The translations under genes were made by a program, and so were the position numbers. The notes beneath the pieces were generated by a model, which was not told the origin of the DNA, did no database searches, and was given only the letters and a program-made list of their open reading frames with translations. Positions 1 to 41,356 of a stretch of DNA of 64,000 nucleotides are shown here, piece by piece. This DNA comes from Pecten maximus (Eukaryota). Each line of letters starts with the position of its first letter. Positions within the stretch are counted from its first letter, which is position 1. The stretch lies in NCBI RefSeq assembly GCF_902652985.1, contig NC_047016.1, forward strand, positions 51,770,001 to 51,834,000, read 5' to 3'.

Positions 1-737
1 ACTCTCCTTAACTAAGCTGTACCTGACAGTGTTGGTGAAGTCTCCCAGACCGTTACACACAACACACATCAACTCTCCCAGACCGTTACACACGACACAC
101 ATCAACTCTCCTTAACTACGCTGTACCTGACAGTGTTGGTGAAGTCTCCCAGACCGTTACACACGACACACATCAACTCTCCCAGACCGTTACACACGAC
201 ACACATCAACTCTCCTTAACTAAGCTGTACCTGACAGTGTTGGTGAAGTCTCCCAGACCGTTACACACGACACACATCAACTCTCCCAGACCGTTACACA
301 CGACACACATCAACTCTCCTTAACTACGCTGTACCTGACAGTGTTGGTGAAGTCTCCCAGCCCGTTACACACAACACACATCAACTCTCCCAGACCGTTA
401 CACACGACACACATCAACTCTCCTTAACTAAGCTGTGTCTGACAGTGTTGGTGTAGTCTCCCAGACCGTTACACACGACACACATCAACTCTCCCAGACC
501 GTTACACACGACACACATCAAGTCTCCTTAACTAAGCTGTACCTGACAGTGTTGGTGAAGTCTCCCAGCCCGTTACACACAACACACATCAACTCTCCTT
601 AACTAAGCTGTACCTGACAGTGTTGGTGAAGTCTCCCAGACCATTACACACAACACACATCAACTCTCCTTAACTAAGCTGTACCTGACAGTGTTGGTGA
701 AGTCTCCCAGCCCGTTACACACAACACACATCAACTC
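1..737 (-). repeat. Minisatellite, 71/104-bp units = last 53 nt of PHF14 exon 20 + first 18 nt of the intron (donor included)
   Basis: About 8 units are visible, truncated by the window edge. Minus-strand unit: gagttgatgtgtgttgtgtgtaacgggctgggagacttcaccaacactgtcag|gtacagcttagttaagga. Confidence 0.95.
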
Positions 738-3700
738 CCCACGAAAGTGTTCCTCTTTTCCTCCTCTCTGTTTCTTGGATGGTGGAGGCTGACTTAGCTT
801 AATTGATGTATCTGGTGTTGGTTCAGTCTAAAGAAAAAATAGAAAAAGAGAAAAAAAATATGAATTTTTTTCAATATCAACAAGATGTTGAGGGACTCTG
901 TGTTCCACTTTATAAGCCTATACATTAATTCACATCCATAAAGGGCATCCATTGTCCAATTAACTGATCAAAGCTGTTAACTAATTCCCCACCACCTATC
1001 AAATATTTAACAAATTTAGTATAAGGACTAAAAGGAATATGGGGGTTTATCCCACCAACCATCAAATCCTTTAATACAAGTGCCGCCCACCCCTCCCACA
1101 CAGATAATTCTGGAATTGCCTTAAATTATTTGGGTATTAGAAATGCATTTACCCCTCTTCATTTAAACATATTAGAAATGCGTTTACCCCTCTTCATTTA
1201 AACATATCAGAAATGCGTTTACCCCTCTTCATTTAAACATATTAGAAATGCGTTTACCCCTCTTCATTTAAACATATCAGAAATGCGTTTACCCCTCTTC
1301 ATTTAAACATTTGTTCAGACCCACTCCGATTTCCCTGGGCTCTAGAGTCATGATTTCTACACTTTGGACCCCGAGTAGTTTTATACAACATTATTTATCA
1401 TACCCTGTACCTGACAATAAATTCACATTTAAATGTACCATTGTCTTGTGTGTCTGTTTGTATTATCCTTTGACATTACCGACCAGTCAGTTCTGTCATT
1501 GCATTTTAGCTCCACCTATGTTTGCCATAACTCGGATTGTCACATTTTAAAACCAGCATTATCACATTCTAACTTCTTATGAACTATAGCATGATAGCTG
1601 CACATGTAATTTTTGTACAAAACGTAGGTGTTATTTGTATGGAGTTTGTATCATAATCTTGTAAAGATCCAGTTTACATGGCTGCTACTGTAAAACTTTC
1701 TTGAGAGGAACAGTATTTATACAAATTTCTGCTTATAATATACTTCAATATCCATATATATGTATAGTTACACCCAAATCTAAGTTAAAATCAAATTTGG
1801 ATCAAACCTTTTAGAATATCATTTTAAAATCTTGTAACAATTTCCAGAAATAACAAACTATTCACAAAGATCAACTTTATTTATGTGCTAGTTATTATTT
1901 CAAAATCTAGTATACATGTAACAAATTTCTGATATGACAAGATATACTATGATTACCAATCACCAATTAGTTTTAGTACAATCTGTAGAGGTTTTACCTG
2001 TACCGTACCTCAGTAACAGTGCCGTACCTTAGTTACAGGCATGTCTGATATATCCACACTCGGTCTACTGGTGGAGGGACTATATTTATCCACACTCGGT
2101 CTGTTGGTGGAGGGACTATATTTATCCACACTCGGTCTGTTGGTGGAGGGACTATATTTATCCACACTCAGTCTATTGGTGGAGGGACTATATTTATCCA
2201 CACTCGGTCTGTTGGTGGAGGGACTATATTTATCCACACTCGGTCTGTTGGTGGAGGGACTATATTTATCCACACTCGGTCTACTGGTGGAGGGACTATA
2301 TTTATCCACACTCGGTCTAATGATGGAGGGACTATATTTATCCACACTCAGTCTACTGGTGGAGGGACTATATTTATCAACACTCCGTCTACTGGTGGAG
2401 GGACTATATTTATCCACACTCGGTCTACTGGTGGAGGGACTATATTTATCCACACTCGGTCTAATGGTGGAGGGACTATATTTATCCACACTCGGTCTGT
2501 TGGTGGAGGGACTATATTTATCCACACTCAAGTCTACTGGTGGAGGGACTATATTTATCAACACTCTGTCTACTGGTGGAGGGACTATATTTCTCCACAC
2601 TCCGTCTACTTGTGGAAGGACTACAATGTATATTTCTCCACACTCAGTCTACTGGTGGAGGGACTATATTTATCCACACTCGGTCTATTGATGGAGGGAC
2701 TATATTTATCAACACTTGGTCTACTGGTGGAGGGACTATATTTATCAACACTTGGTCTACTGGTGGAGGGACTATATTTATCCACACTCCGTCTACTGTT
2801 GGAGGGACTATATCTATCCGTTCTCGGTCTACTGGTGGAGGGACTATATTTATTTACACTCGGTCTATTGGTGGAGGGACTATATTTATCCACACTCCGT
2901 CTACCGGTGGAGGGACTATATTTATCCACACTCCGTCTACCGGTGGAGGGACTATATTTATCCACACTCGGTCTACTGGTGGAGGGACTATATTTATCCA
3001 CACTTGGTCTATTGGTGGAGGGACTATATTTATCCACACTCGGTCTACTGGTGGAGGGACTATATTTATCCACACTTGGTCTTCTGATGGAGGGACTATA
3101 TTTATCCACATTTGGTCTATTGGTGGAGGCACTATATTTACGTGGTAGTTTTAGTACAATCTGTCGAGGTTTTATCTGTACCATACCTTAGTTACAGTGG
3201 CGTACCTTAGTTACAGTGCCGAACCTTAGTTACAGTGCCGTACCTTAGTTACAGGAGTGTCAGATATATCCACACTCCGTCTTTTGGTGGAGGGACTATA
3301 TTTACTGGTAGTTTTAGTACAATCTGTCGAGGTTTTATCTGTACCGTACCTTAGTTACAGTGCCGTACCTTAGTTACAGGAGTGTCAGATATATCCACAC
3401 TTGGTCTATTGGTGGAGGGACTAAATTTATCCACACTCGGTCTATTGGTGGAGGGACTAAATTTATCCACACTCGGTCTACTGGTGGAGGGACTAAATTT
3501 ATCCACACTCGGTCTATTGGTGGAGGGACTAAATTTATCCACACTCGGTCTACTGGTGGAGGGACTCTCCGCGACTGATACATCCTCCTTGTTTACTCGT
3601 TTCTTCTGTCTTCCCTTCTTGGTACCACTCTTCACGCTGTACTTTGATGGTAACTAAACAAATGTAAAATGTAGGTGAAAGTAAAAATGAATTTTACGGG

Positions 3701-6700
3701 GGAGAATGGAGATTTTGAAATTGTCCACGATTTCTCAATTCATTTTATTTTTACAATGTTTTTTTGTGATTTTAGTGAAAAACAGAACCCCGCAAATAAA
3801 AATAAAAGCAAAGTGAGTTGGGACTCGCATAGATATATAACCTCTATCCTTAAAAGTGATCAAGTGTGACCTTTGACCTTTAACCCTAACAGGTGATCAC
3901 CAAACTCTAATCAGGTGTTGAACTTGAGGCTGTGATGCTATGGTTCAAATTATAAATATGAACTAAATTTGTCAAGGGGGTTCATGAGATATTTCTACAC
4001 AAGCTGTGTATGAATGGATGGAGACACCAAGTGATTAGTACTAATACCACATTGTACCCCCCCCCCCCCCCCCCCCTCCTTACTGGGGTATAAAATCCTT
4101 AACAAATTTCCCAGTCATGGTTTATAGTGTAGAACAACCCTAGCACTGACCAAACTTGGACAGAATCTGCTCAACAGGTAACAAACTTTCTCCATCAATG
4201 TTTTCTTACCTTTTCAAATTCATATTTAAGGTCAGGTGACCATTTGAAAGGCTCTTTGATTTTCTCTCGTAGTCGACGTGGAGCATTGATGTCCTCCTTA
4301 TTGCCCTCCTCCGGACCGCTGCTGGAGTTATCACACTCGGAACACTGCCTGTAAACAACCAGTTTTATCTTTAAAGATCTAGTTCAGTGGCTAAATGTAG
4401 AATCACATGACCATAAGCTTCAGAGATATAACTAGCACACTTTACAAGGCTCGTAAAACGTAGAGTCAAACCTCTGCTGATTGAATCTAAAGTTCATGTT
4501 AGGAGGCATAACACATAACTTAAGGTCATGGTCTTTCAAACTAAGCTCGTAAAAGTGTTACAATTTGATTACAAACCAATTACATGGAGGATACCGACAA
4601 GTGTCTTCTTGTTTATTTACCTCGGTACATTAAGGTGAAATGTTGATAATACAACATTCTAAAAATCAGAACCATTGAAGTAATTACAACTGAATCATGT
4701 GGCATACAAACGAGGACCAATCTTTAGAAAGTGTTCTAGATGCCAGTGTTTCCAGGTTCAGTAGCTTTACTACTAATCCCAGTCACAAAACTTACCAGCC
4801 CATCAGCTTGGTTTTCTTGGGCATGCGAGTGAGTGGTGGTTCCAGACAGCCCAGGTGGTAATACTTTTTACATAGGTCACACTTCACCAGTAGATGTGGA
4901 TTACAGGACTTTTTACACACAGCACACCTGTCAGCAGAACAATCCCAAATGCAATGTTTTCTAAACACAGGTCAAATTGTGATCTCCTTTGAAAATTAAA
5001 TATTTTGATCTAGCCTTGTAAAACTATTTTAAAGAGTTACCAATACTTAACTCTTTTCTACTGCAAAATACTAAACACTCGTCATTTATATCAGATTTTT
5101 AATCGCACAAATTGTTTTTTAAGTATGGTAGCATACATCTTCTGGTCTCCCTATCAAAGTAAGGTAGCACACATTTTCAAGTCTCCTTGTCAAAGTAAGT
5201 TAGCACCCAGCCTTAAGTTTCCCTGTCAAAGTAAGGTAGCACACATTTTCAAGTCTCCTTGTCAAAGTAAGGTAACATACAGCCTTAAGTCTCCATGTCA
5301 AAGTAAGGTAGCATACAGCCTTAAGTCTCCTTGTCAAAGCAAGGTAGTTCACATTTTAAAGTCTCTCTGTCAAAGTAATGTAACATTAAGCCTGAAGCCT
5401 CCATGTCAAAGTAAGGTAACATACAGCCTTAAGTCTCCCTGTCAAAGTAAGGTAACATACAGCCTTAAGTCTCCCTGTCAAAGTAAGGTAACATACACCC
5501 TTAAGTCTCCCTGTCAAAGTAAGGTAACATACACCCTTAGGTCTCCCTGTCAAAGGAAGGTAGCATACAGCCTTAAGTCTACATGTCATAGTAAGGTAAA
5601 ACACAGCCTTAAGTCTCCATGTCAAAGTAAGGTAACATACAGCCTCAAGTCTCCCTGTCAAAGTAAGGTAACATACAGCCTTAAGTCTCCCTGTCAAAGT
5701 AAGGTAGCATACAGCCTTAAGTCTCCCTGTCAAAGTAAGGTAGCATACAGCCTTAAGTCTCCCTGTCAAAGTAAGGTAGCATACAGCCTTAAGTCTCCCT
5801 GTCAAAGTAAGGTAACATACAGCCTTAAGTCTCCCTGTCAAAGTAAGGTAACATACACCCTTAAGTCTCCCTGTCAAAGTAAGGTAACATACACCCTTAG
5901 GTCTCCCTGTCAAAGGAAGGTAGCATACAGCCTTAAGTCTACATGTCATAGTAAGGTAAAACACAGCCTTAAGTCTCCATGTCAAAGTAAGGTAACATAC
6001 AGCCTCAAGTCTCCCTGTCAAAGTAAGGTAACATACAGCCTTAAGTCTCCCTGTCAAAGTAAGGTAGCATACAGCCTTAAGTCTCCCTGTCAAAGTAAGG
6101 TAGCATACAGCCTTAAGTCTCCCTGTCAAAGTAAGGTAGCATACAGCCTTAAGTCTCCCTGTCAAAGTAAGGTAACATACAGCCTTAAGTCTCCCTGTCA
6201 AAGTAAGGTAGCATACAGCCTTAAGTCTCCCTGTCAAAGTAAGGTAGCATACAGCCTTAAGTCTCCCTGTCAAAGTAAGGTAACATACAGCCTTAAGTCT
6301 CCCTGTCAAAGAAAGGTAGCATACAGCCTTAAGTCTCCCTGTCAAAGGAAGGTAGCATACATCCTTAAGTCTCCATGTCACCGTAAGGTAGCATACATCC
6401 TTAAGTCTCCTTGTCAAAGTAAGGTAGCATACAGCGTTAAGTCTCAGTGTCAAAGTAAGGTAGCATACAGTCTTAAGTCTCCTTGTCAAAGTAAGGTAGC
6501 ATCCAGCCTTAAGTCTCTCCATGTCAAAGTAAGGTAGCATACAGCCTTAAGTCTCCCTGTCAAAGTAAGGTAACATACACCCTTAGGTCTCCCTGTCAAA
6601 GTAAGGTAGCATACAGCCTTAAGTCTCCCTGTCAAAGTAAGGTAGCATACAGCCTTAAGTCTCCCTGTCAAAGTAAGGTAGCATACAGCCTTAAGTCTCC

Positions 6701-9700
6701 CTGTCAAAGTAAGGTAACATACAGCCTTAAGTCTCCCTGTCAAAGTAAGGTAGCATACAGCCTTAAGTCTCCCTGTCAAAGTAAGGTAACATACAGCCTT
6801 AAGTCTCCCTGTCAAAGTAAGGTAGCATACAGCCTTAAGTCTCCCTGTCAAAGTAAGGTAGCATACAGCCTTAAGTCTCCCTGTCAAAGGAAGGTAGCAT
6901 ACATCCTTAAGTCTCCATGTCACCGTAAGGTAGCATACATCCTTAAGTCTCCATGTCAAAGTAAGGTAGCATACAGCCTTAAGTCTCCCTGTCAAAGTAA
7001 GGTAGCATACAGCCTTAAGTCTCCGTGTCAAAGTAAGGTAGCATACAGCCTTAAGTCTCTCCATGTCAAAGTAAGGTAACATACAGCCTTAAGTCTCTCC
7101 TTGTCAAAGTAAGGTAGCATACAGCCTTAAGTCTGCCTGTCAAAGTAAGGTAGCATACAGCCTTAAGTCTCCGTGTCAAAGTAAGGTAACATACAGCCTT
7201 AAGTCTCTCCATGTCAAAGTAAGGTAGCATACAGTCTTAAGTCTCCTTGTCAAAGTAAGGTAGCATACAGCCTTAAGTCTCCGTGTCAAAGTAAGGTAAC
7301 ATACAGCCTTAAGTCTCTCCATGTCAAAGTAAGGTAGCATACAGTCTTAAGTCTCCTTGTCAAAGTAAGGTAGCATACAGCCTTAAGTCTCCGTGTCAAA
7401 GTAAGGTAGCATCCAGCCTTAAGTCTCTCCGTGTCAAAGTAAGGTAGCATACAGCCTTAAGTCTCCCTGTCAAAGTAAGGTAGCATACAGCCTTAAGTGT
7501 TACTCACTGGTTAATGATGGCAGGAGGTGAGACACAGGGTACACTATCGTGTCTTGTTGGGGTTTTGACTGGGGCTCTCTTGGTATTGAACATCTCTGGC
7601 ATAGTGAGAGGCTGAAGGTGATAAAAAAATCCCACATAAATAGGTACAGTTTCAGGGTTCACTGGGATACAATCAAATAGATGTAGTACATGTATTCAAA
7701 AGCCACATTTAAAACCCATGTGAATTTAGCCCTTAAATGAAAATCCTGTTTCCTGTAAAGAATATGTTCTGGAAGGTTTGTGAGGCTAGACCTTAGATTT
7801 AAAATTTCTTCAATTTTATTCTTATTTTAAACCTAAATATCACTTTGAATTTTACTTCTTCTCTCTGATTTCTTAAAGTTAGGCTTTTCTGCAATCAATC
7901 TAATCAATCTAATGCCAAAAGTCAAGAGGCGATTTCTGAATATCAAATCACCAATAATCTATTATTTCAATTAATCAAGTAGAAATATTCAGTTCAGTTG
8001 AGATGGATCTGGAGATGCTGACCTTGACCATCATCTCTGTAAGCATGCTGTACATGTTCGATCCCTCCTGTTTCAATCGCTGTGAGTGGTCCTTTAGGCG
8101 GTCAATATCAGCAAGCAGCTGTTTCAAATAGAAAACCAAGGTAAACTAATTATTTAAGTTTCCATAAACAACTGTAGTCAGTAATTGCGAAGCTCACCAG
8201 CAGCAGCCATAGGAATATGCTTATGCCACCGGTAATGAAAAGTTTCAGAAACTTATTCCAATATAGAATTTCAATGCCAAATTGTTTCATTTTATGCACC
8301 AACAGAATATATTTGTTGAGATAAAAACAATATTTTGCCTGTATCTGTTACAGTAGTAGTCATCAACCTGGTCATACTGTCGACGTAAGTTGTTCTCCTG
8401 TTTTTGTAGTATCCTGTGTTTATTTACCTCACCGCACTGTCAACGTAGGACGTTCTCCTGTTTTTGCAGTACACTGTTTTACTATTTACCTGGTTGAACT
8501 GTCAACGTAGGACGTTCTCCTGTTTTTGCAGTATACTGTTTTACTATTTACCTGGTTGAACTGTCGATGTAGGACGTTCTCCTGTTTTTGCAGTACACTG
8601 TTTTACTATTTACCTGGTTGAACTGTCAACGTAGGACGTTCTCCTGTTTTTGCAGTACACTGTTTTACTATTTACCTGGTTGAACTGTCGATGTAGGACG
8701 TTCTCCTGTTTTTGCAGTATACTGTGTTACTATTTACCTGGTCGAACTGTCGACGTAGGACATCCTCCTGTTTTTGCAGTATACTGTACTATTATTTACC
8801 TGGTCGAACTGTCGACGTAGGACATCCTCCTGTTTTTGCAGTATACTGTACTATTATTTACCTGGTCGTACTGTCGACGTAGGATGTTCTCCTGTTTTTG
8901 CAGTATACTGTATTATTATTTACCTGGTCGAACTGTCGACGTAGGACGATCTCCTGTTTTTGCAGTATACTGTGTTACTATTTACCTGGTCGTACTGTCG
9001 ACGTAGGACGATCTCCTGTTTTTGCAGTATACTGTGTTACTACAGTCGACGTAGGAAATCCTCCTGTTTTTGCAATATACTGTATTATTATTTACCTGGT
9101 CATACTGACGGCGGAGGATGTTCTCCTGTTTTTGCAGTATACTGTGTTACTACAGTCGACGTAGGATGTTCTCCTGTTTTTGCAATATACTGTGTTACTA
9201 CAGTCGACGTAGGACGTTCTCCTGTTTTTGCAGTATACTGTATTATTATTTACCTGGTCATACTGACGGCGGAGGATGCTCTCCTGTTTTTGCAGCATAC
9301 TGTTCTGTGTAACATTCTCTGTGATGTTTCTTTTGATGTTATCAATCTTACTGTTCCTTTCTGCAAAAAATAAAAATTCTCAACAATTTCATACTGGAAA
9401 ACTTATCTAGTCATATTTTTTTTACATAAATATATAAATTTTATTACGACAATAACCAAAGACATCTCATTCGATATTCATTTTTATGATCATTTCATTC
9501 TCCGTTATTGTACATTTAAATTATTCAACAGAAAAGGACAAATTAACATACAGAATGAAATAAATCATTATATAAGTTTTACTTTCGTGTCCTAAATTTG
9601 TCTTGTTGACAAGACAGCTGCACTTACCAAGGTAGTAGCTGATGAACTCCACAGACAAAGCCGGAGATATATGCGTTTTCTTGCGCATCTCCTGTTTCTC

Positions 9701-12700
9701 CTCTGTGACATGCTGTACCTGGGTAATGATTCCCATCAGCTCTGCCTTCCGTAGCATCTTCTTTACGCAGGAGGGACTCGATGTCAGATATCTCACCAGC
9801 TTCTGTGTCGGTACTGAACAACACAAAAACACTGATCAGGCAGTCTCCATGAAGGTCATGATTATTACTAGTATATCATAATAATTAATTTTGCATTGTT
9901 TGTATGCAGAATGCTGCTTTCTGATTGGCTGAATTTTTTTTTCATACCTCTATGAAAAAAAATCCGAAAATGTGACATCACAATATGGCCACTGACGTTG
10001 TGTATTGATTTGTGAAAAAGAATCCCTTTTAAGATCAGTTAAATGTCAGACCCACCATTTGTAATTTTGCATTTTGAATCTCCACCACTTACAGATGCTT
10101 TAGTCAAATTTGGCTGAGTTCATATCAGTAGTTTTTAAGAAGTTGTTTTTGTTCAATTTTGCTAAATTATTGATGGAGGGATGATGAACGCCACTGCATG
10201 ACATGAGCTCACCTTGGTCCTTCAGACAAAATGAGCTCAAAATAAAATGAAGTAGAGAAAAATGAAGCATTATTTGACCTCCTTGGATCAAATTTTGGTA
10301 TCAATCAAACAAATGTGACTGGTGACACAACTACAGGTAACAAAATCCAAATCAAACAGAACACAGTCTTACCCCATGATGGCGGCCGCTTGAATTTTGA
10401 TATTCTGTACTTTTGTCTATGTCTGTTTAGTTTTCTGTCAAATCGTGTCTGGAAAGAAAACAGAAATGTGTAGTGAGAGTATTGTATAAATGTATAGAGA
10501 AAGTATTACTGAATACTGTCAATCTTTCTCTATCATCAAAATGTGAAGTGAATGGGCAAAAATAAATATCTTCTGATACAAAAGTGAAAGGGCAAAAATA
10601 AATATCTTCTGATACACAGTTTCAAAGTTTAAGTGTTTCTACGTCGTCCTTCTTGTCAAAATAAATCAAAGTCAGCTCTTCAACAAGTTTTTCCTCATAA
10701 ACCATGTCACAGCTTATGTATGAATTTTCAGATATCATTACTAGAATAATTGTTCTTTTCAGTATAATACATTTATGCATGATAACATTATTATTTTCTT
10801 AAGATTTGTATGTGTAGTTGAACTGGACTGGCTTGAACACTGGTGACAGGTAGAATATATAACAAGCTAATTAACATGTTTTTTTAAAAAGACTTCATCA
10901 CATAAAACAAAATGCATATACCGTAAATATTCGCGTATAGTGCGCACTTTTTTTCAAAAATTGACAAGTGAAAAAGACCACTGCGCACTATACGCAAGTA
11001 CAAGCCTTTTCCCAGTCAGAATGAATGTGATTTGACTGAGATTTGTGATCGTTTCCTTTCACAGCAGGATTGATTGAATACTTATAATATATATATATAA
11101 CATATATAAAGCATTAAGAAAGTAACAGTTAACAAATTATCAAAGAAATGAATAGTTATTTTAATGTTTAATTCCTTGAAATTGTGTATTTATCAGCAAT
11201 TACGTGGATTTATCTAAGTCGATCGTGAGCCACATGTTCCGTACACATACGATCTCACTTGAGCATGTTCCCGTATTCAGGTCCAAAACGATGTATAACA
11301 TCTCAATTAACATCAAACAAAACTTGAAATGATATAGCAGTACTTAGTAATTTCATACTTCTAAATTAATCACCTTATAAATCCAGAATGTTGCCAGAAA
11401 CTGATAACGTTCAACTTGTTTATTTACGGAAGCTGTAACAGCACGCATGCGCAATTAGCAGGGGTAACACTAATGCCTTGATCTCATGCGGCAGTCACTG
11501 ACCAACTGGCCATATAAAATACGATATGACTGTGAAAACTACCGGGGTACTCTTATTTATCGTCTGCACTGTATATTTATCCTTTACACATGTTAATTCA
11601 TTGATATAAAAGTTGTGACCAGCACGACGACTGCAGACCTGTTTCCGTACTGTATACAAAATGGCGGCCTGTGTTACATTACGTAGCAGTCAGCTTACTA
11701 GTCAATCTTGTTATAATTGAGCTTAATTAGCTTTGTATGTTCGTGGACAGATACAACAAGATATCATACCTGCGTGAAAAACACAAGGTAATTGAGGGTA
11801 GGATTAATTATTTTGTTGGTACAACAGCGTAGATGGGACCGCTACAATTTGCAAGCTGACTAGGCCTGTGGCGGTATAATGTAAACAACCTGTCAATCCA
11901 ATGTGTCAAATCTGACCGGTGATTCCAATTAAATGTGGTACATATTGTAAATAAGCTTTCATAAGTTACAAATTCCTATCATCTTATGCTTTAGAATTCA
12001 TCTACCGCTCAGTTGAAAATTGAAAAAAAAAATTGTTTTTTTTTTTTTTTAAATGAACCTCAAAAACGTACCTGCGCACTATACGCGAGTGCGCACTATA
12101 CCCGAATATTTACGGTAATGACTTTGCATGGTTTAATTGGTTTTTAATTCGATTTTTAAATTACCTTTATAATGTTTTTAATTATCGACCAAATTAATAT
12201 AATTACCTTTTCCTTCTCGTCCTCGATCACTTTCTCTGTGTGTTTCTTGATATGTGACTGTATGGCGAGCCAATTTCTCCGCTTAGCCCGAGCCATCAAT
12301 TTATCAGCATGCATCTTACAGTAGGCAAAGAAAGGATCGGCAATGTCCTAACATCAGAAAGGAAGAATATTCAACATGGAAATAAGTATTACAATATTTA
12401 GTCTGTTGTTGAGAACGCTCTTTAAAACGATTCAAATTTTAATTTGACAAAGATTTGATTGCCTCATGACTATGCATTCTCTCATTTTTACCTACAACAT
12501 CACAATGCCTGGGGAACTATTAGAATACAGAGCCAAGGGAGTGTAACAAAATTAGTTTGTATCTACACAAATTATAAAAGTATATGCAGTTTTTCTGTAT
12601 AGTGTTTTCAGTACATTAGCTCTCTGGTACAGACAAGATGTAGTTTTCATTTAACAATGCACAAAAAATAAACACTATAATTTCACACAATATATTACCC

Positions 12701-15700
12701 GATATATTTAAACAAGATTGATAGCCTTCCGCCCCAGCCACAGGCCAAATATCAGGTCTCCAGGTCTCTTGGATTTTGAGAAGAAATTGTTTAAAGATTT
12801 GAGCATTTTTGACTCCTTTGACCTCGAATGCAGGTGAAGGTCATTTATTTGAATAAACTTGGTAGGCCTTCAACCCTGCCTGCTACACCCCAAATATCAG
12901 ATCTTTGAGCTTTTTGGTTATTAAGAAGAAGTTGGTTTAATAGAAAAGTTGATACAAGACTGGTGATGGCTGGACGACAGATTTCGCACCATGCCATAAG
13001 CTCATTGGTCTCCTGGTAGGTGAGCTAACAATTAGAAAACAAGTTATATCATATGTTAATCACTCTTTTTAGCCTGGATAAAAGCACCCAGGGTGTCTTA
13101 TTGTGGGAGGAAACTGGAGAACTCGAAGTAGACAAGTAACCCCATATATCTTTTCATGTCCCAATGCGGAATAGAACACCAGCTGCCTAGGTGAAAGGCA
13201 AGTGTGTAACCAAGGTGCCACGCGACCACCCAATAACCTTAGTGTTGGCATAACAATATTTTGTTGAATTACACACCATGCATTCTTCAGGAGCAGCCTC
13301 AGACAGCAGTCCTTCCTTCTGGGCACTGAAACAAGACATGATGACACGTGTCAACCTTGACTTAGCCAAACACTAAATCACTGATATTGGGAACCATACA
13401 CTTGGCATAAGTTAACTAACGAAGTACGAACAAAGTAGTAAAACTTATAAAACATTCCTTCAGTACACTAAGTTTCTTTCTTCTTGTTCAAAATATGCTT
13501 TAATTTTTGCTTTATAAAAAAAGTTTATCTTGTTTTTAAAGGGATGCAGGAATTCTATACCTACCATGTTACATGAAAGTAAGTCCTACACATGCCCGCA
13601 TCACAGCTGATACACACACCTGTTCTGCTGAACCGAGCATCCTCGCACAGCGAACATTCCTGTAACAGACAAACTGGACTGATCATCTATAACAATTCAG
13701 CTCACAAAACAGCCCAAACTAGATTCGGTTTAGGATTTCGGCACTGTCCAAAGGTCAAACTAAAAAGATCTGTTTTATTTTATTTCCCTAATTTACCTTA
13801 AAGGTATTGTTACAATACCGTAAACACATTGTTTCTCTTACTGAAGTTTGCTCTATAGTTAACTGCTGTAATCTGATCTTTTAACAAACTAGAACCTATT
13901 GATCACCAAGTCAAAAACACCTTTGGGCTATTCCTTTAAAATATCTACCTGACCCCAGAACTCCACAATAAATCACTTCAATCCATGGTTGGATTACCTT
14001 CCTATTACTTCTATGTAATTTATTAAATAAATTCTATGAGTGTCGAGGTACCCCTTAACAAAACCTGGAGTCCTGGGGGTGGGGTAGATGTTTTACTGGA
14101 AAAGCCCTTTCTAAATTTTGAATCAACTCCTGCTTTGGAAATAAATATGAGGCATATTCAATTATACCTTGAGTAGATCATTTTAAACAGGGTAACAGAT
14201 TTTCTCTACCTACCCGTGCACCCCATCTTGAGTAGGGCATTTCAAACAGGGTAACAGGGCTGAGTTTGTCCACATCTCCAAAGGCAACACCAGGAGTGTA
14301 GAGAGCACAGACTAGGTGTACCCACCTGTGTGTAAAAGATAGACATGTAATTCAACACAAAGATTTGAGGGCTATCCAGTAACATATATCCAAAAGAAAG
14401 ACCCTAGAAAAACAAATATAGACAATCACATGTAATTCAACACAAAGATTTAGGGGATATTCCAGTAACATATATCCAAAAGAAAGACCCAAGAAAAACA
14501 AATATAGACAATCACATGTAATTCAACACAAAGATTTGGAGGCTATCCAGTAACATATATATATATATATATCCTAAAGAAAGACCTTAGAAAAACAGTC
14601 ACGAATGGTGGGCACAAGAGATAATGTGACCTCACATATACAGTTTTGTTGAAATTAAATCAATTCTTTCTTTGTTTGACAAATCTGCAGTCCTCCTTTT
14701 GGGTAGATGTTTTACTGAAATAGTCCTTAAAACGTAAATTTTTATATGAATCTTCTATCAATAGATATATATAATATTTCTATAATGTCTATCAAGTATT
14801 CCTGTATGTAACATAACCACTAACAGTCACTCTAGGTTGTCTGCATTCCAATTTCATTTCATTCTTTTTTCAAGATTTTATTTTTACGTCACCTTCATTT
14901 AAACTGTCTACTTACAGAATGTCAAATTACAAATATTTCATAGCATGATTTAGCACTTACTTTCCCGCATCTGTTTCTTTAAATATCCCACCGGGATTCG
15001 GACAAAGTTCGCAAGTCTGAATAGAAATAAATCAAGTGTAGGAACAGTTCAATGTACAAGTATACAGTTTCATATAAAACACCACTTAACTCTCCCAACT
15101 TTTCCATAAAAATCAAAGAACTGGGACTTAACCTTCGTCTTTCGTTTAGAGTTCAGATCTGTGAGGAAAATTTTGACAGAAGACTATTTTGTCTTAAGTT
15201 TCAATCGAGAATTTTTTTTAGGATTTCCTTTGCGTAAAGTCATCCTTTATCAAAACGTACTATGTAATAGGTTTCGCAGATTTCAATTCCTTTGTATAAG
15301 GTTAAACATTAATATTCCATACAAGATTTCTGATTTTCATTGTAGTTTCATACTTACTGGTTTACAGTCGGCCTTACAGGCGTCACAGAACCAGGGTTCT
15401 GTACTGGCTGACGATTCAGTGCTGGCATTTGATTGGTTCTCACTGATACCATAGCAACCTAACACAAGTACAAAGTAAGTTAGCAATTCAAATATGATGT
15501 ATAACAGTAAGAGAAACAGTGAGATTTTAATAAATGGATTTCTTTACCATAAAAAAATCAAGTAGACGATTTTCACCTAACTCTCATCAAACCCTCTATA
15601 ATAAGGTTTCTTTTCCAATATTGGTAGGTTTTTCAAATAATTGAAGCAGAAAGGGTGCATTTTTCTCATTTTTATTGTATTTTACACAGTATTTTTGCTT

Positions 15701-24960: not shown

Positions 24961-26738
24961 AGATAAAAAACCTGGGGCCTCTTCGTTTATGTGGACAAAC
25001 CGGTCAGTCAGTTTTTAAATGTAATATTTCAAAATACATCTTGAGGGACCTGCAAATGTTAATACAGGCCATGGAAGTCTTTGCCAAGGCTCGTCTGAAA
25101 ACAATATAAAATCACTAGATCCATCATTATTTCATAAACGAACAACACCAGTCCAAAACTGGTACGGTCGGTCCTTATTCAGGCCGTCATCGTGAGATAT
25201 ACATGAATGGTGCCATATTAATCGGGTTGTCCATTCATACGTAGTACTGTTGCGTCATTTACACTCGGAAATCATTCAGCAATTCTTTGAAGGATGTGCA
25301 TGCTTGTTTTGGATTACTTTGCAGGCCCAGAGGTCAAGGTCATTGTTACTATAAATGGAAATTCAGATTATTCAAAATATTTCTGGTTCTGCTGGGGAGA
25401 TATGATTTATCCTTTTCTTACTACAAGAAGTGCTTGCTTGGGATTTCAATTCAGGCCCAAAGTTTAAGGTGTTGCTTCGATATTTCCAGTTTTGTTTGGC
25501 AGATTACACTCACACTTTATCCAGTGTTTACTCAAAATAGTGCTTGTTCAAAGGTCAAGGTCATCGTAACTATGGATATAAAATCAGTTTATCCAGATTA
25601 TTTTCAGTTCTGTTTGACAAATTGTGCTTCAATTTATCCAGGGCATTCACAAAGTAAATGTTTCTTTATGATAGTTTTTTAGACTTGGATATCAAAGGTC
25701 AAGGTCTCTTACTATAAATAGAAAATCAGTTAATGCTCAATATTGTGAGTTATGTTTGGATGATCGCACTCCAACTTTATCAAGTACTTTCCTGAAGAAA
25801 TTGATTGAGATAGAGTTTCAGAGTTGCATGTTAAAGATCAAGAGGTGATCATTACTATAAATATGCAAAATATAAGTTCTGCAGGACCTGTTCTATTGCC
25901 CTCATATCCAGTAATTCCTCATAGAGTGCACTTGTTTGCAATAGCTTTTCCGCATGTAGGTAAAGGGTCATAGTTATACCACCATTTCCTAAAGATGACT
26001 CTTGGAGTAACTGTGGTAATTATAACACTGGGTTTACAGTGACACACCAGTAATTAATTTGACATGTTAAGAACAGATTTCCAGGAAATGGTGTTTTGAG
26101 TTCTGAGATTGCTAAATGTCATAATGGTTTATGCACAAATTTTGAGTAAATTACAATCAGACTTTATCCAGTTCTTTCTTGAAGAAATTAATTGCTTGAG
26201 ATAGCTTCATAGGTATGGATTTCGAAGGTCAAGGTCACTCTTACTGTATATAGAAAATCAGTTTATGCACAATATCTTTTGAGTTCTGTAGGACCAATTG
26301 CACTTGGACTTTATCCAGTACACTAAGATCTTTAAGTACTTGCTATAGATAGTTTTTTTCAGGGTTGGATGTCAAAGGTTAAGGATACTATCAATAGAAA
26401 ATTGTCTTTGAATCTGCAACACTCAGGTTAAATTCTGGTTTACAGGCACACACACAGTTTATACTGAAGTTTGTGACTGAAGGTCACCAGGTCAAAGGTC
26501 AAAAATAACCCAAAGCTCAAATTCTGTTTCTCTGAACTAGTAGACATTTTTTTTTTCTTTTTTTTTTCAGAAAATAATGTTCAACAAGATTGGTGTACTC
26601 AAAGGTCTAGGTCAAATGTCAAGGCCGTAGATGTCAAAACTATTTTCTCAGATTTGCAAATGCATCATGTACACACATATTACAATACGATTCAATTTAA
26701 ACAAAACAAACACTTGAGTAGTTCTATTGGTTAAAACA

Positions 26739-26744
26739 TTTATT
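26739..26744 (-). terminator. Candidate distal polyadenylation signal of the zinc-finger gene
   Basis: AATAAA on the minus strand followed by GT-rich gtgtttgttttgtt. It marks the edge between unique AT-rich sequence and repeat-derived DNA. Confidence 0.35.
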
Positions 26745-32700: not shown

Positions 32701-33490
32701 TGATAACTGTATGTTTACTAAGAAGTGATTTCATTGGCTAAAGAGATATGTCAGGTGCTCAATCGTAGTACAGTTTATATAATTGATTTCTGCACTTTAT
32801 AATCGGATGCAATTGTTTTTTATGTACATATATATATATATCAAGATTTTTTTCGTGATGCAATAAGTCTGTATTTACAAAATATCTGTATAGTATTTAA
32901 AAGAATAAATGGTCCACATAATAATATAAAAAACAATATGTTAACAAAACAATAGCAAATTCACAAAATTAAGTTGAGCATGCTTTTCACATAGTTAATC
33001 CCAATGTACATCAATGCCTCCATGTCAATTAAAAAGATCCCAGCGATGCTGCGTACGATAAACATCCTCTTGGCCATAGCACACACTCCCATATATCTCA
33101 AAACACGTCCGCTAGTGGTAAAAGTAACAAGTTAAAACTTCTTCAAATTCAGCACATCGTAATTACCTCCCTTTATATGTTGAATTTTTGACAAAAGACA
33201 CACTTTTCTTTGTATTTCCATTATTCATGATTTTTGTTTGTGCTGTAAATCTCATCTTTCTGAGGTATCCTTTCCGTTTTCAACACAACATATCAACTTT
33301 GAAATAACCAAGTTATGTGTCGTGTAACATAAATTGGTACATGTCCTGACGTTGATTTCTCAATTGGATTTTCACCTAGATGTATCATCTCTGATTGTTA
33401 GTGTACTTTAGAGGTATAATTGGCATGTGTTAACTCAAAGATCATATATATATAGCAAATTCTTCTAGTCTCTAAATTTGGTGAAATGAA

Positions 33491-36400: not shown

Positions 36401-39400
36401 GTGAACTCTGAGAAACCCTTGCCACACTCCTGACAATAGCACTGTTTGTGTCCACTATGTATCTTGATATGTTTGAGCAGGGAAATCTCCCTATGGAATG
36501 ACTTGCGACACACTAGGCAAACATACGAACCATTGCTGTTCTTTCGATATTTCAATCCACGCCAGAACCGGCACAACATCTCATTTTCACGATCCTCGCT
36601 ATCTTTCTTAAATATATCATCCTTGTCAGACTTGCCCTCAACTGGAGATGAACTACCTTCTCTCTCATCACTGTTCTCATCGTTACCTTCTGATTTCACC
36701 TGAATTCCTGAATCCATGTCAGAGTTCGACGTGTCGTTGTCGGCGTCGTTATTTTTACACTCGTTCTGTTGTCTTTTACTTGCATTGTCTACCTCCGACG
36801 GATGTCTTTTCCTTATATGTTGCATCACTTGGTTCTTAAACCAGAATGAGGCTTTACATAACTGGCACTGAAAAATCACAATATCTTTTTCAAAATGCAT
36901 TGACAAGTGGCACTGCACCTTACTTAAGTAATTAAACACCTTTCCACACAAGTAACACTTGTACAGGCACATGTCTTTACCGTTGGAAAGATTAACACCA
37001 TCCAATCGAGTGATGAGTACCGTCTCGTTCCTGATGCTGATTCTATTTTTAGTAAAATGAGACCCATGAATGATCTCTGCCCCGACCATACTGGATCCAT
37101 CTTTGATCATTTCTGTGATGTCTGGTGGGTCCATACTGTCAGAATTTTCCAACAAGTTTTTTGAGTTGGCCGACAGGTCAGTATTAGCCAACATCCCCTG
37201 ATTTTCGTTTGGTGCCTTATGTTTGAACAACCCTGTTGATTCATCTAACTCTACTTCACCATCCTGAAACGAGCTGGTGTAGCCACAACTGTAAAAGACT
37301 TTATTTCCCTTTTCCACTGTATAACTGTCTAAGTTTGGTATGGATGACGTTTCGTCAGAGTCACCATCTTCCATGTCCACCTCGGAGCCATTGGAAATTA
37401 TAGGTTTTGGAGTGTTCTCTACGTTTTGGTGAGCCATTTTGGTTGCTAGGGAGTGTAGATTGCTTTGTTTTTTCAGTCGGAGAAAGCGTTCCTCCAGCCC
37501 CGGACTCAGCTCGATGTCAAATCCGTGTGCTGACTTCTTGTGGTACAACATGCTGTTCTTGGCACGAAATGGTTTTCCACATATCTGTAAGGAAAAAGAC
37601 GTTTCATTAAGATATTAATTAAGGTAATATCAGGGATCATTGTAGGGCGAGCTCTAGGGATTTTCCCCCATAGTTTTCCAGAAAATCTTAATAATTTTTT
37701 TTTTTTTTTCTCAAGTTTATAACAATGCGGTTGACATTGAAAAATAAGGATTATAAAGTTGTGCCAACAAGTTCAAGGGAGTAAACAATGTATGCATTTC
37801 AAAACCCTATCATCAGTTTTTGCCAAAATAAAACAACATAACTTAAAAATATTTTGAAAACTTTTACTTTTAAATGCATACATTGTTTACTCCCTCGAAC
37901 TTAATGAATTTTTGAAAGTGTATAACTTTACGCAGATCTACTACCTGTAAAATCCCCAAAATCATCTCTGCTGAATATATAACTTTTATTGTACAAAAAA
38001 TTAAAATGTGTGTACAAAAGATCATAATTAAGATGGAAAATGAATAAAGAGTTGAAACAGATAACAGACAAGTTTGGTCCTACAGCTCAAGTTCTGTCCC
38101 TACAGCTCCAGGCTATGGCCATAGAGTAAGTTCTGTCCTACAGCTCCAGGCTATGGCCATAGAGTAAGTTCTGTCCTACAGCTCAAGTTCTGTCCTACAG
38201 CTCCAGGCTATGGCCATAGAGTAAGTTCTGTCCCTACAGCTCCAGGCTATGGCCATAGAGTAAGTTCTGTCCTACAGCTCCAGGCTATGGCCATAGAGTA
38301 AGTTCTGTCCTACAGCTCAGCTAGGCCTAGTATTCTTGTCCTACAGCTCCAGGCTATGGCCATAGAGTAAGTTCTGTCCCTACAGCTCCAGGCTATGGCC
38401 ATAGAGTAAGTTCTGTCCCTACAGCTCCAGGCTATGGCCATAGAGTAAGTTCTGTCCTACAGCTCCAGGCTATGGCCATAGAGTAAGTTCTGTCCTACAG
38501 CTCCAGGCTATGGCCATAGAGTAAGTTTCTGTCCCTACAGCTCCAGGCTATGGCCATAGAGTAAGTTCTGTCCCTACAGCTCCAGGCTATGGCCATAGAG
38601 TAAGTTCTGTCCCTACAGCTCCAGGCTATGGCCATAGAGTAAGTTCTGTCCTACAGCTCCAGGCTATGGCCATAGAGTAAGTTCTGTCCTACAGCTCCAG
38701 GCTATGGCCATAGAGTAAGTTCTGTCCTACAGCTCCAGGCTATGGCCATAGAGTAAGTTCTGTCCCTACAGCTCCAGGCTATGGCCATAGAGTAAGTTCT
38801 GTCCCTACAGCTCCAGGCTATGGCCATAGAGTAAGTTCTGTCCCTACAGCTCCAGGCTATGGCCATAGAGTAAGTTCTGTCCTACAGCTCCAGGCTATGG
38901 CCATAGAGTAAGTTCTGTCCCTACAGCTCCAGGCTATGGCCATAGAGTAAGTTCTGTCCTACAGCTCAAGGATTTGTCCTTCAATTTATTTATTTTATGA
39001 AAGTCTAGGGAAGCTATAGTGATTGTCAGTTTGTATTATGGTTTGCATTATTATTTAAACATTTATTTCAAACCTGATGCATGCATTACACACATTAAAA
39101 TCATGACATAAAGACACTAGTCATTGATATTTACATCACTGCCACACACATTACACTTTCTGTGTGAATAATCGCACCACACTTTCTGTGTGAATACTCA
39201 CATCACACTTTCTGTGTGAATACTCACATCACATTTTCTGTGTGAATACTCGCACCACACTTTCTGTGTGAATACTCGCACCACACTTTCTGTGTGAATA
39301 CTCACACCACACTTTCTGTGTGAATACTCACACCACACTTTCTGTGTGAATACTCACACCACACTTTCTGTGTGAATACTCACATCACACTTTCTGTGGG

Positions 39401-41356
39401 AATACTTACACCACACTTTCTGTGTGAATACTCAAACCACACTTTCTGTGTGAATACTCACACCACACTTTCTGTGTGAATACTCACACCACACTTTCTG
39501 TGTGAATACTCACATCACACTTTCTGTGGGAATACTTACACCACACTTTCTGTGTGAATACTCAAACCACACTTTCTGTGTGAATACTCACACCACACTT
39601 TCTGTGTGAATACTCACACCACACTTTCTGTGTGAATACTCACACCACACTTTCTGTGGGAATACTTACATCACACTTGAAGGGACGTTCCCCAGTGTGG
39701 CACATCATGTGTCGTTTGAGGTCGCTTGGTTTGAGGCAGAGTTTGCCACAAATGTAGCAAGTACGGTCACTCTGACACTCCATATCGGCTCCACTCTCTG
39801 GACTCGTGCTTGAATCCTTCCCATCCTGCCGAATCATACCGTCCATCATTGTTACATCTGGTGAGTCGTCCCCTTTGAAGCGCTTAGTTCCGTCTGGAGA
39901 GATAAGCTCAGCTCGCAGTTGATCCATCTCTAACTTTCGCTTCCGCATGAGAGAGTACTTTTGGGATATGTTACTGTTTTCACTTTTAATGCCATGGTGC
40001 ATGAACTGATGATACTGAAGACTTCGTTTGGCTTTGAACATACGACTGCACATCTGAAATAAAAAAAAGTTCATAAATTACAGCCTCAAATCACTTTATA
40101 AGATAAATTTAGTAACCGATTCTAAATGAATCATAACTAGACATTAACCAAATTTTGATTACTTAGAAGCCAATTCAGGGCTTTTTTAGGGCCATTAATG
40201 GGCCCCCATTCCCAATTGAAATTATTTCCTATAAGCCAAATCCCCAAAACTTGCAGTTTACTCCTAAAACTCTTTCCAATTCACCACTTTTCTTCCCAAA
40301 CGAGAAAGTCTAATTTCAAACTGTGAGAAAAAGCCCTGCAATTATAATTGAGCATTCTGCTGAAGCCATGAACTGGTGTTTAATGTTGACGTACCTTGCA
40401 TTTGAATGGACGTTCCCCAGTGTGTTTACGGATATGTCGCTGGAGGTCTGCTGGGCTTTTCTTTACTACAGCACAGAACTCACATGTCCTGTCCTTCAGA
40501 GAGCTGTTGAATCCTTTACTTAACATGCTCTCTTCCCTGTTGTTCACTTCCTTTTTGGTTTCTCCTTCATCGCTTAACTCATCGATACAGAGCTGGCCTT
40601 CATCCTCCTCCTCCTCCTCCTCCTCATCTAACTCCATCATTTCATCGTCATCTTTTTCACTTTCATTGTTTTCTGAATGTTTATCCTCTATCTCGACATT
40701 ATCTAGTTCTAAATTGGAATCACTTTGAATGTCATTGTCACCGGAATTTTCCTTTTCCTCCATTTCTTCCTCCTTATTTTTTTCGTCTTTATCCTCAACA
40801 GCCAACTGATCACTAACGTCACCTTTATCATCCACACTGTCAGTTTCTTTATCTGACGGAACTTCCTTTAACTCTCCTGCTTCTTTATTCGAAGTCTCGT
40901 TGATAATCAACTCTTCAGGTTCATTGTCAGATGCAGCATCTGTTGTTGCAGTAATGTGGTTATCATCGGAATCTCCTACTTTTTCCTTGTCAGAGGATTC
41001 ATCTTCTTTAGGAATGTTTTCAGTACTATCTACTTTTATATCCAGCGACTCATCTACATTTTCATCTGACTTATCACAGCCTTTCTCTATTTTTGTATCT
41101 TCCTCCTCTTCGTCCTCACTCCCCTCACTGATCTCATCCTCCACATGTACTTCCTTCTCTTTCTTTTGTTTCTCTCTCTCGCTCTTCTTTGGGGTAATGT
41201 GACCAGGGGTCTTCCCCGATGGAGGTGCTCCTTTACTACGAGTTACTCTGGTTGTACGTATTGGTGTCACAATGTTACCATTGTCATCCGAAATTGCCTT
41301 TTTGTGAACAGAAGACTTTCTTGTAGATTTTGTGGGGCTTTCATCTTCTTCTTCAC
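33491..41356 (-). CDS. Core (six 3' coding exons) of the C2H2 zinc-finger gene
   Basis: Supported by long ORFs 40380-41366, 39640-40074, 35302-37551, 34078-34299 and 33491-33751, which contain canonical C2H2 fingers. The exon 34821-34969 (CPFCSKDFLSYSDINRHMDFHE) was found by hand. Confidence 0.95.

What the first reader, a model, noticed from the sequence alone, without database searches (positions are those of the whole stretch)
1..39678. Recurrent 'exon-end + splice donor' minisatellites: arrays of decoy 5' splice sites seeded at real exon junctions
Seen: four unrelated arrays in two genes each have a unit that straddles an authentic exon/intron donor junction and repeats into the downstream intron. 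They are PHF14 exon 20 (53+18 nt), exon 19 (9+10 nt, plus larger cassettes), exon 14 (49+13 nt) and the zinc-finger exon ending at 39670 (9+17 nt). A one-off copy sits after PHF14 exon 8, and a 36-bp array starts about 10 nt after the exon 16 donor. I saw no equivalent arrays at acceptor junctions. Unit lengths (71, 19, 62, 26) are not multiples of 3, and read-through of the exon 14, 19, 20 and zinc-finger donors reaches a stop quickly. Inference: either a mutational process is targeted to 5' splice sites (e.g. transcription- or splicing-coupled breaks or R-loops with slippage), or selection tolerates duplications only in this polarity because the first donor stays intact. The arrays could titrate U1 snRNP or tune unproductive splicing and NMD by copy number.
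Basis: partly seen in the sequence, partly recalled or inferred. Interest (0 to 1): 0.85.

Follow-up and report, generated by a model that had tools for sequence, protein, structure and literature searches.

The report
Old splice-junction minisatellites in scallop PHF14
Several intron repeats in two king-scallop genes are tandem copies of an exon end plus its splice signal. This is a known and apparently harmless repeat type ("mirage" minisatellite), but three of the arrays have survived at the same junctions in three distantly related scallops.

Summary
In king-scallop PHF14 (minus strand), the donors of exons 14, 19 and 20, and one donor of the neighbouring C2H2 zinc-finger gene, are each followed by about 7-20 tandem copies of "exon end + GT donor". 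Exon 8 has a one-off copy.

RNA contigs from four studies, the RefSeq proteins and orthologues show that only the first, exon-contiguous donor is used.

This is a known kind: amphioxus "mirage" minisatellites and the human F7 intron-7 VNTR. This scan has already reported it at least 9 times elsewhere in this genome.

- In 50 loci around protein-kinase exons I found two acceptor-side arrays and one or two donor-side arrays. That is roughly what random seeding gives at this minisatellite density.
- Decoy donors are no more conserved than the rest of the unit.

New here:
- The exon-14 and exon-20 arrays, and probably the exon-8 array, sit at the same junctions with near-identical exon-side breakpoints in Pecten, Ylistrum and Mizuhopecten (fourfold-site divergence about 0.6).
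- They evolve in concert with their exon.
- The exon-19 array and the zinc-finger array are absent from the scallop orthologues examined.

The parts
685..827 (-). PHF14 exon 20. The authentic donor follows 685 (cag|gtacag).
   Evidence: Exact mapping of RefSeq protein P0119. The protein reads ...GDFTNTV|SCDECK, as in the orthologues.
1..741 (-). Exon-20 junction array. The unit is 71 nt (53 exon + 18 intron), with a 33-nt internal sub-repeat that gives 104-nt units. It continues 1.7 kb beyond the window start, about 2.4 kb in all. There are 20 decoy junctions, 18 of which keep GT.
3369..3653 (-). PHF14 exon 19. It holds an in-frame coding repeat of 5 x 36 nt (12 aa) at 3392-3566 that the other scallops lack.
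   Evidence: Exon 19 is 135 nt in Ylistrum and 147 nt in Mizuhopecten.
2008..3368 (-). Exon-19 junction repeats. The 19-nt unit is ctgtaactaag|gtacggca, with decoy donors at 3349, 3243, 3224, 3205, 3186, 2027 and 2008. These sit inside a threefold higher-order cassette made of exon tail + donor + about 75 nt of intron. The third cassette carries 30 copies of the exon's 36-nt unit (2051-3140).
5121..7498 (-). 36-nt x 66 intronic array that starts 9 nt after the exon-16 donor (exon 16 = 7508-7611). It fills 92% of intron 16. It is not demonstrably junction-derived.
   Evidence: The same unit lies at the same place in Mizuhopecten. There is no significant similarity to the exon-16 donor or the exon-17 acceptor.
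9254..9360 (-). PHF14 exon 14. The authentic donor follows 9254 (gaccag|gtaaat).
   Evidence: RNA contigs of four runs end exactly at 9254 and join exon 13 by GT-AG. Also.
8366..9303 (-). Exon-14 junction array. The unit is 62 nt (49 exon + 13 intron), with 48-nt variants. About 15 copies are present, and 10-11 decoy donors match the authentic one.
14155..14325 (-). PHF14 exon 8 (14214-14325) and the one-off degenerate copy of its end in the intron. This is the remnant of an array that has 8.4 copies in Mizuhopecten.
39670..40053 (-). Zinc-finger gene coding exon ending ...TGERPFKCD|gtaagt. RefSeq names the gene 'ras-responsive element-binding protein 1-like'.
   Evidence: The joined model is one open frame of 1348 aa. 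P0243 and the orthologues read FKCD|ICGKPF.
39153..39678 (-). Zinc-finger junction array, 26 nt (9 exon + 17 intron) x 20. The orthologous Ylistrum intron lacks it.
38069..38971 (-). 39-nt x 21 plain intronic array in the same zinc-finger intron. Together the two arrays make up about 68% of that intron.

Best explanation
These are 'mirage' junction minisatellites.

Origin and silence:
- Each began as a short tandem duplication that happened to span an exon end and its 5' splice site, in a genome whose introns are very rich in minisatellites.
- The duplication is silent because the spliceosome keeps using the copy that is contiguous with the exon: the first donor, or for acceptor-side arrays the last acceptor.
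- Selection therefore does not remove it, and unequal exchange or slippage then expands it into the intron.

Persistence:
- The copy next to the exon is held constant by selection on the protein and the splice site.
- Exchange with that copy keeps the whole array homogeneous, so such arrays can stay recognisable for very long times.
- The exon-14 and exon-20 arrays of PHF14, and probably the exon-8 array, date from before the split of Pecten, Ylistrum and Mizuhopecten.
- The exon-19 array (absent from Ylistrum and Mizuhopecten) and the zinc-finger array (absent from Ylistrum, the only orthologue examined) look younger.

Shown: anatomy, first-donor use in the dominant mRNA, shared junctions and breakpoints, concerted evolution.

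Inferred: neutrality, the exchange mechanism, and 'exon anchoring' as the reason for persistence.
For: Anatomy and exact exon map.

First donor used:
- A spliced contig of about 2 kb in four runs from four studies ends exon 14 exactly at 9254 and carries no array unit.
- RefSeq proteins P0119 and P0243 and the orthologues read straight across the exon 14, 19, 20 and zinc-finger joins.

Both polarities, at about the chance rate:
- The sample was 50 loci (200 kb) around protein-kinase exons. It held 118 arrays (0.59 per kb), covering 12% of bases.
- Acceptor-side arrays: 2 among at most 27 acceptor sides.
- Donor-side arrays: 1-2 among at most 34 donor sides.
- Random seeding predicts about 3% of junctions (0.67 arrays per kb of non-array DNA x about 45 nt; my arithmetic).

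Scaling with minisatellite load (PHF14 orthologues):

| Species | Array share | Junction arrays |
|---|---|---|
| Pecten | 38% of intron DNA | 4-5 |
| Mizuhopecten | 28% of intron DNA | 4-5 |
| Ylistrum | 24% of intron DNA | 4-5 |
| Pinctada | 24% of the locus | 4 |
| Solemya | 7.7% of the locus | 1 |
| Mactra | 2% of the locus | 0 |

Shared origin:
- The same junctions carry arrays in three genera whose fourfold sites differ by K about 0.6.
- The exon-side breakpoint is the same within 1-2 nt, and the intron parts of the units are related.
- A unit-by-unit comparison finds only these arrays and the intron-16 array shared between species.

Concerted evolution: units are 83-96% identical within a species and 69-81% between species. 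The authentic exon end shares its species' diagnostic bases with the decoys.

No selection on the decoys: 4.7% against 4.9% variability.

Precedent:
- Amphioxus mirages at both boundaries that do not disturb splicing (PMC3087553, PMC3902484).
- The human F7 IVS7 37-bp VNTR, where only the most upstream donor is chosen by 5'-to-3' scanning (PMC1557585).
Against: - Within this window, 4 of 26 donors carry arrays where uniform seeding predicts about 0.6 (my arithmetic, Poisson P about 0.003). The window was chosen for exactly this, however.
- Across all PHF14 orthologues, donor-side arrays outnumber acceptor-side ones by about 9 to 2.
- Survival of arrays over K about 0.6, while the unique intron DNA beside them has become unalignable, could also mean selection for the arrays.
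- The intron part of the exon-20 unit is better conserved between species (74-90%) than fourfold sites are (58%).
- Logan contigs cannot show rare isoforms, so low-level decoy use removed by NMD is not excluded.
- The Mizuhopecten RefSeq model P0240 reads 192 nt of exon-14 array units as in-frame exons. The GenBank model P0109 does not.
Confidence: 0.75

Rival explanations
1. The arrays are functional. Ladders of decoy 5' splice sites are kept by selection because they tune PHF14 output, either through unproductive splicing and NMD or through U1 binding in the intron that protects against premature polyadenylation or enhances the upstream exon.
For: - Two arrays, probably three, are retained at the same junctions in three genera over K about 0.6, while the flanking intron sequence is scrambled.
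- About 96% of decoys keep GT.
- One public Mizuhopecten model uses array units as exons.
Against: - No decoy is used in the dominant mRNA of four studies.
- Decoy splice-site positions vary as much as other unit positions.
- Copy number and unit length drift widely. Exon 14 has 12-16, 15 and 50 copies in the three species, and exon 8 has 1.6, 8.4 or a 26-nt derivative.
- The zinc-finger and exon-19 arrays are lineage-specific.
- About 40 decoys per pre-mRNA is negligible beside cellular U1 abundance (general knowledge).
Confidence: 0.13
2. A mutational process is aimed at 5' splice sites, for example transcription- or splicing-coupled breaks or R-loops. It repeatedly seeds duplications there, or specific junctions are hot spots.
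For: - There is a local excess at donors in this window.
- Donor-side arrays are the majority in PHF14 of scallops and Pinctada.
- The same junctions recur across species, which a site-specific hot spot would also produce.
Against: - The near-identical exon-side breakpoints and related intron parts point to single inherited events.
- Acceptor-side arrays of 9, 13.6, 5 and 6 copies exist.
- Non-ascertained counts run about 6-7 donors to 4-5 acceptors.
- The rate in the kinase-exon sample matches random seeding.
- Pinctada carries its arrays at other junctions than the scallops do.
Confidence: 0.08
3. The arrays are assembly or collapse artefacts of a repeat-rich, heterozygous genome.
For: Array lengths in a single assembly are uncertain. 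The same gene has a probable 1-base assembly error in exon 21.
Against: Homologous arrays stand in three independent species' assemblies. Array sequence with variants is present in contigs of independent runs.
Confidence: 0.01

Closest known systems
Amphioxus 'mirage' minisatellites (Adh3, globins, troponin C, PGBD5; as described in PMC3087553 and PMC3902484)
   Same: - Tandem repeats whose unit spans an exon-intron boundary.
- Units of 10-160 nt.
- Both 5' and 3' boundaries can be involved.
- The copies carry AG/GT signals, yet normal splicing is kept.
- Concerted evolution within arrays, with the edge copies more diverged.
   Different: - Here the host is a bivalve mollusc, with up to 50 copies and kilobase arrays that make up 24-38% of PHF14 intron DNA.
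- The arrays share junctions and breakpoints across three genera at fourfold-site K about 0.6. The papers I could read do not report this.
- Somatic instability was not tested here.
Human F7 intron-7 37-bp VNTR (PMC1557585)
   Same: The first repeat element spans the exon-intron boundary. The authentic donor is followed by identical, functional but silent pseudo-donors, and only the most upstream one is used.
   Different: That is a single locus with few copies. Its mechanism, 5'-to-3' oriented scanning, was shown by 50 minigene constructs in mammalian cells. Here only the outcome is seen (first donor used), and the mechanism is inferred.
Intron gain by tandem duplication across an AGGT proto-splice site (Rogers model, as cited in PMC3087553)
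   Same: It starts from the same kind of event: a tandem duplication that contains splice signals.
   Different: No new intron or exon arises here. The mRNA is unchanged and the copies only lengthen an existing intron.

Membership tests
Mirage (splice-junction) minisatellite | The tandem repeat unit spans an authentic exon-intron boundary | tested here: met
   Exact exon map from P0119 and a junction-probe scan: exon 14 (49+13 nt), exon 19 (11+8), exon 20 (53+18), zinc-finger exon (9+17)..
Mirage (splice-junction) minisatellite | Regular splicing is kept: only the exon-contiguous site is used | tested here: met
   Exon 14: RNA contigs of four studies stop at 9254. Exons 19 and 20 and the zinc-finger exon: RefSeq proteins and orthologues read across the first donor. 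Rare isoforms were not testable.
Mirage (splice-junction) minisatellite | Either boundary (5' or 3') can be duplicated | tested here: met
   Acceptor-side arrays in L034 and L048 of this genome, at Ylistrum PHF14 exon 17 and in Solemya. There is none in this window.
Mirage (splice-junction) minisatellite | Minisatellite dynamics: length instability and concerted evolution of units | tested here: met
   Copy numbers differ 3- to 10-fold between species. Unit identity is 83-96% within species and 69-81% between. Polymorphism within the species and somatic instability were not tested.
F7-IVS7-type silent pseudo-donor array | Pseudo-donors match the authentic donor over the splice-site consensus but are unused | tested here: met
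   Decoy consensus equals the authentic site (CAG|gtaaat, CAG|gtacag, AAG|gtacgg). They are unused in the dominant mRNA.
F7-IVS7-type silent pseudo-donor array | Choice of the first site by 5'-to-3' scanning, shown by mutating the first site | not testable with these tools
   This needs minigene or genome-editing experiments.
Functional decoy / U1-sponge element | Decoy splice sites are conserved above the background of the unit, or are used in regulated isoforms | tested here: not met
   Variability at 5' splice-site positions is 4.7%, against 4.9% for the rest of the unit (p = 0.82). No decoy junction appears in the contigs.
Intron gain by tandem duplication (Rogers model) | A new intron is spliced out between duplicated AGGT sites | tested here: not met
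   Intron positions are identical in scallops, Pinctada, Mactra and Solemya for these exons, and the mRNA is unchanged.

The most novel reading that the evidence does not exclude
The exon-14, exon-20 and probably exon-8 donor arrays of PHF14 are ancient elements kept by selection in scallops, and are more than tolerated. On this reading, ladders of decoy 5' splice sites set how much productive PHF14 mRNA is made, through unproductive splicing and NMD or through intronic U1 binding. Exchange between decoys and the exon also feeds substitutions into the coding sequence. An example is the Tyr-to-Phe change in Pecten exon 20, which most decoys share while a few distal decoys keep the ancestral TAC.
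Probability: 0.12. Interest if true: 0.75.

Novelty: new member of a known kind. Interest (0 to 1): 0.4.

Why it matters
- **Natural splicing experiments.** These loci place up to 50 identical decoy donors, or acceptors, next to the real site. They could test how splice sites are chosen outside mammals.
- **Annotation errors.** One Mizuhopecten model and the Pinctada PHF14 model place exons inside the arrays.
- **Intron growth.** The arrays account for 24-38% of PHF14 intron DNA in scallops.
- **Long persistence.** The cross-species result shows that a minisatellite tied to an exon can stay recognisable over a divergence that has erased the rest of the intron. This gives a simple, testable reason (anchoring by the selected exon copy) why junction arrays may look over-represented without any targeted mutation.

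Tried and rejected
- As the tool advised, I laid a part with fewer copies. Exons 19 and 20 and the zinc-finger exon therefore have no RNA evidence of their own.
- **Genome sample cut short.** The donor-versus-acceptor test therefore has little power.
- **Origin of the 36-nt intron-16 array.** I tested whether it descends from the exon-16 donor or the exon-17 acceptor, or matches the 36-nt acceptor array of Ylistrum. No alignment beat shuffled controls (p = 0.14-0.88), so I rejected the idea.
- **Orthology from unique flanks.** The flanks are unalignable between species (z at most 2), so orthology rests on junction identity, breakpoints and unit similarity.
- **26-nt repeat at 54710-54777.** It has GGTGAGT motifs and lies in zinc-finger intron 1. 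No exon is evident next to it, so I did not count it.
- **Loci not on record.** The Mizuhopecten and Argopecten zinc-finger loci and the Dreissena and Mercenaria PHF14 loci.
- **No divergence date.** I found none in readable text, so I give K at fourfold sites instead.
- **Spliced sequences.** Exon joins were checked only in local scripts against public protein models.


Full report
**What the window is.** Earlier notes of this scan identify the genome as the king scallop, Pecten maximus. The window is contig C2:51770001-51834000. Both genes lie on the minus strand.

A PHF14 exon found PHF14 proteins. Among them is the RefSeq protein 'PHD finger protein 14-like [Pecten maximus]' (P0119, 831 aa), which sits on a contig of exactly the length of C2. 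I mapped it exactly onto the window plus 10 kb of left flank (L003).

The neighbouring gene is a C2H2 zinc-finger gene, which RefSeq names 'ras-responsive element-binding protein 1-like' (P0243, 1366 aa). Its six downstream coding exons join into one open frame of 1348 aa. Its first coding exon lies near 59972, so 41.4-60 kb is its first intron. Exon joins were checked only in local scripts against public protein models.

**Checking the observation.** Tandem Repeats Finder lists all the arrays, and direct reading confirms that the units straddle the donors.

| Exon | Unit (exon + intron) | Junction |
|---|---|---|
| 20 | 53 + 18 nt | ...ctgtcag\|gtacag |
| 14 | 49 + 13 nt | ...gaccag\|gtaaat |
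| Zinc-finger exon | 9 + 17 nt | ...aagtgtgat\|gtaagt |
| 19 | 11 + 8 nt | ctgtaactaag\|gtacggca |

An unbiased junction-probe scan covered 25 donors and 25 acceptors of the two genes. It found copies only downstream of these four donors (10, 6-7, 19 and 18 copies) and at no acceptor.

- The exon-20 array continues 1.7 kb beyond the window start, about 2.4 kb in all. It holds 20 decoy junctions, 18 of which keep GT.
- Intron 19 is more complex. The exon tail, its donor and about 75 nt of intron occur three times as a large cassette. The third cassette carries 30 copies of the 36-nt unit that is a coding 12-aa repeat inside exon 19.
- Exon 8 has about 1.6 copies of a 59-nt junction unit.

**Which donor is used.** I laid contigs of four runs from four studies on 8800-14799. 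All four contain one spliced contig of about 2 kb. It covers exons 8-14 with GT-AG joints, leaves the genome exactly at 9254 (the first exon-14 donor), and continues with 588 letters of downstream exons. No array unit is included.

Low-depth contigs over the array in two runs fit pre-mRNA signal multiplied by copy number. Unique intron bins have none. This reading is my inference.

For exons 19 and 20 and the zinc-finger exon, the evidence is the RefSeq proteins and the orthologues, which read straight across the first donor (...PVTK|TEPTP...TNTV|SCDECK...FKCD|ICGKPF). Use of the next decoy would shift the frame in every case.

**Is it known?** Yes.
- The scan's own notes pointed to amphioxus 'mirages'. 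I checked the papers. [quoted passage not shown]
- PMC1557585 describes the human F7 intron-7 VNTR. Its first element spans the boundary, and its identical pseudo-donors stay silent because the most upstream site is chosen by 5'-to-3' scanning.
- I found no paper on such arrays in bivalves.
- This scan has reported the same thing at least nine times elsewhere in this genome, including 46- and 49-copy acceptor arrays.

**Is it donor-specific or more frequent than chance?** Within this window, 4 of 26 donors carry arrays where uniform seeding predicts about 0.6 (my arithmetic). But the window was picked for this.

For a sample not chosen by eye, I took 50 loci (200 kb) around protein-kinase exon matches in the same genome.
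- Arrays cover 12% of bases, at 0.59 per kb.
- Among at most 27 acceptor sides and 34 donor sides, I found two acceptor-straddling arrays: L034 (54 nt x 9) and L048 (51 nt x 13.6).
- I found one clear donor array, on the same L048 exon (about 45 nt x 14), and one two-copy donor duplication in L045.
- That is 3-7% of junctions. Random seeding predicts about 3%.

It nevertheless shows both polarities and no need for a targeted process.

**Orthologous loci.** This is the new part. I fetched PHF14 loci of Ylistrum balloti (L055), Mizuhopecten yessoensis (L058), Pinctada imbricata (L056), Mactra antiquata (L057) and Solemya velum (L060), and mapped their public proteins exactly.

Fourfold-degenerate sites differ by K = 0.61-0.69 between the three scallops. 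The unique intron DNA next to the arrays cannot be aligned. Yet all three scallops carry an array at the exon-14 donor and at the exon-20 donor.

| Array | Pecten | Ylistrum | Mizuhopecten |
|---|---|---|---|
| Exon 14 (junction copies) | 12-16 | 15 | 50 |
| Exon 20 (junction copies) | 21 | 17 | 5 |
| Exon 8 | 1.6 copies | 26-nt derivative x 28 | 8.4 copies |

- The exon-side breakpoint is the same within 1-2 nt. The intron parts of the units are related in sequence and close in length.
- Units are 83-96% identical within a species and 69-81% between species. The authentic exon end shares its species' diagnostic bases with its decoys. This is concerted evolution that includes the exon.
- A systematic unit-against-unit comparison finds no other shared arrays, except the 36-nt intron-16 array shared by Pecten and Mizuhopecten.
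- If arrays fell at random among 20 donors, the chance of this overlap would be about 1e-5 (my arithmetic). The arrays are therefore inherited, or much less likely they mark junction-specific hot spots.

Other findings from the orthologues:
- The exon-19 arrays are absent from the Ylistrum and Mizuhopecten orthologues, and the zinc-finger array is absent from Ylistrum, the only zinc-finger orthologue I could fetch.
- Ylistrum has an acceptor-side array at exon 17, and Solemya has one at the orthologous exon.
- Pinctada has donor arrays at three other exons, plus an 88-copy whole-exon array.
- Mactra has none, and only 2% array DNA.

**Signs of selection on the decoys.** There are none. Positions -3 to +6 of the decoys vary as much as the rest of the unit (4.7% against 4.9%, p = 0.82). 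The anchors used to extract the units slightly favour conservation at -3 to -1.

**Conclusion.** The arrays are best read as tolerated junction duplications in minisatellite-rich pteriomorph genomes, silent because the exon-contiguous site is used.

Rare decoy use hidden by NMD remains untested.

What I add is that some of these arrays are old, are inherited across genera, and co-evolve with their exon. I explain this, as an inference, by anchoring to the selected exon copy. A selected function is a minority alternative.

Noticed in passing
L003:7678-7771 (PHF14 exon 21, just left of the window): The Pecten reference reads GGATGCTTTGGACCC, where Ylistrum reads GGATGCTTGGATCC and Mizuhopecten GGATGTTTGGATCC. 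One extra T shifts the frame. The RefSeq protein therefore ends ...FGPSCQEVSQTARILLAL, instead of the conserved ...LDPPAKKSPKQRGYSWHCEACD of the last PHD finger. This is probably an assembly indel rather than a real truncation.
   Followed up: partly
window:3392-3566: Exon 19 of Pecten PHF14 carries five in-frame copies of a 36-nt (12-aa) unit, SPST(S/N)RPSVDKF. Ylistrum and Mizuhopecten have one copy, so this is a species-specific coding minisatellite. Its unit was also carried into the intron and expanded there to 30 copies.
   Followed up: partly
L058:15555-18599 (Mizuhopecten yessoensis PHF14): The RefSeq model XP_021341981.1 (P0240, 883 aa) reads through the first exon-14 donor and adds two mini-exons cut out of the 50-copy array, 192 nt in all and in frame. 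The GenBank model (P0109, 819 aa) uses the first donor. One of the two is wrong, or the decoys are sometimes used.
   Followed up: no
L056:4115-10553 (Pinctada imbricata PHF14): A 73-nt unit made of a whole 53-nt exon (the orthologue of scallop exon 4, encoding ...VTICCVCLGD..) plus 20 nt of intron is repeated 88 times. The public gene model places 18-nt and 35-nt 'exons' deep inside the array.
   Followed up: partly
L048:1318-2947 (this genome, C12:28892309-28896635, minus strand): One protein-kinase exon has junction arrays on both sides: 13.6 copies of its acceptor junction upstream, and about 14 copies of its donor junction downstream.
   Followed up: partly
window:685-741 and the array to its left (units at 439, and -322, -1447, -1660 in L003): Pecten exon 20 encodes Phe (TTC) where the other two scallops have Tyr (TAC). 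Most decoys also carry TTC, but four decoy units keep TAC, two of them at the distal end. This suggests sequence exchange between the intronic decoys and the coding exon.
   Followed up: partly
window:54710-54777: A 26-nt repeat of 2.6 copies with consensus-like GGTGAGT donor motifs lies in the 18.6-kb first intron of the zinc-finger gene. No exon is evident beside it.
   Followed up: partly
window:9800-14200 (PHF14 introns): Several intron stretches (about 9800-10200, 10800-12200, 12800-13400 and 13800-14200) draw very deep contigs in the RNA runs, with many variants. They look like expressed interspersed repeats rather than PHF14 transcript.
   Followed up: no
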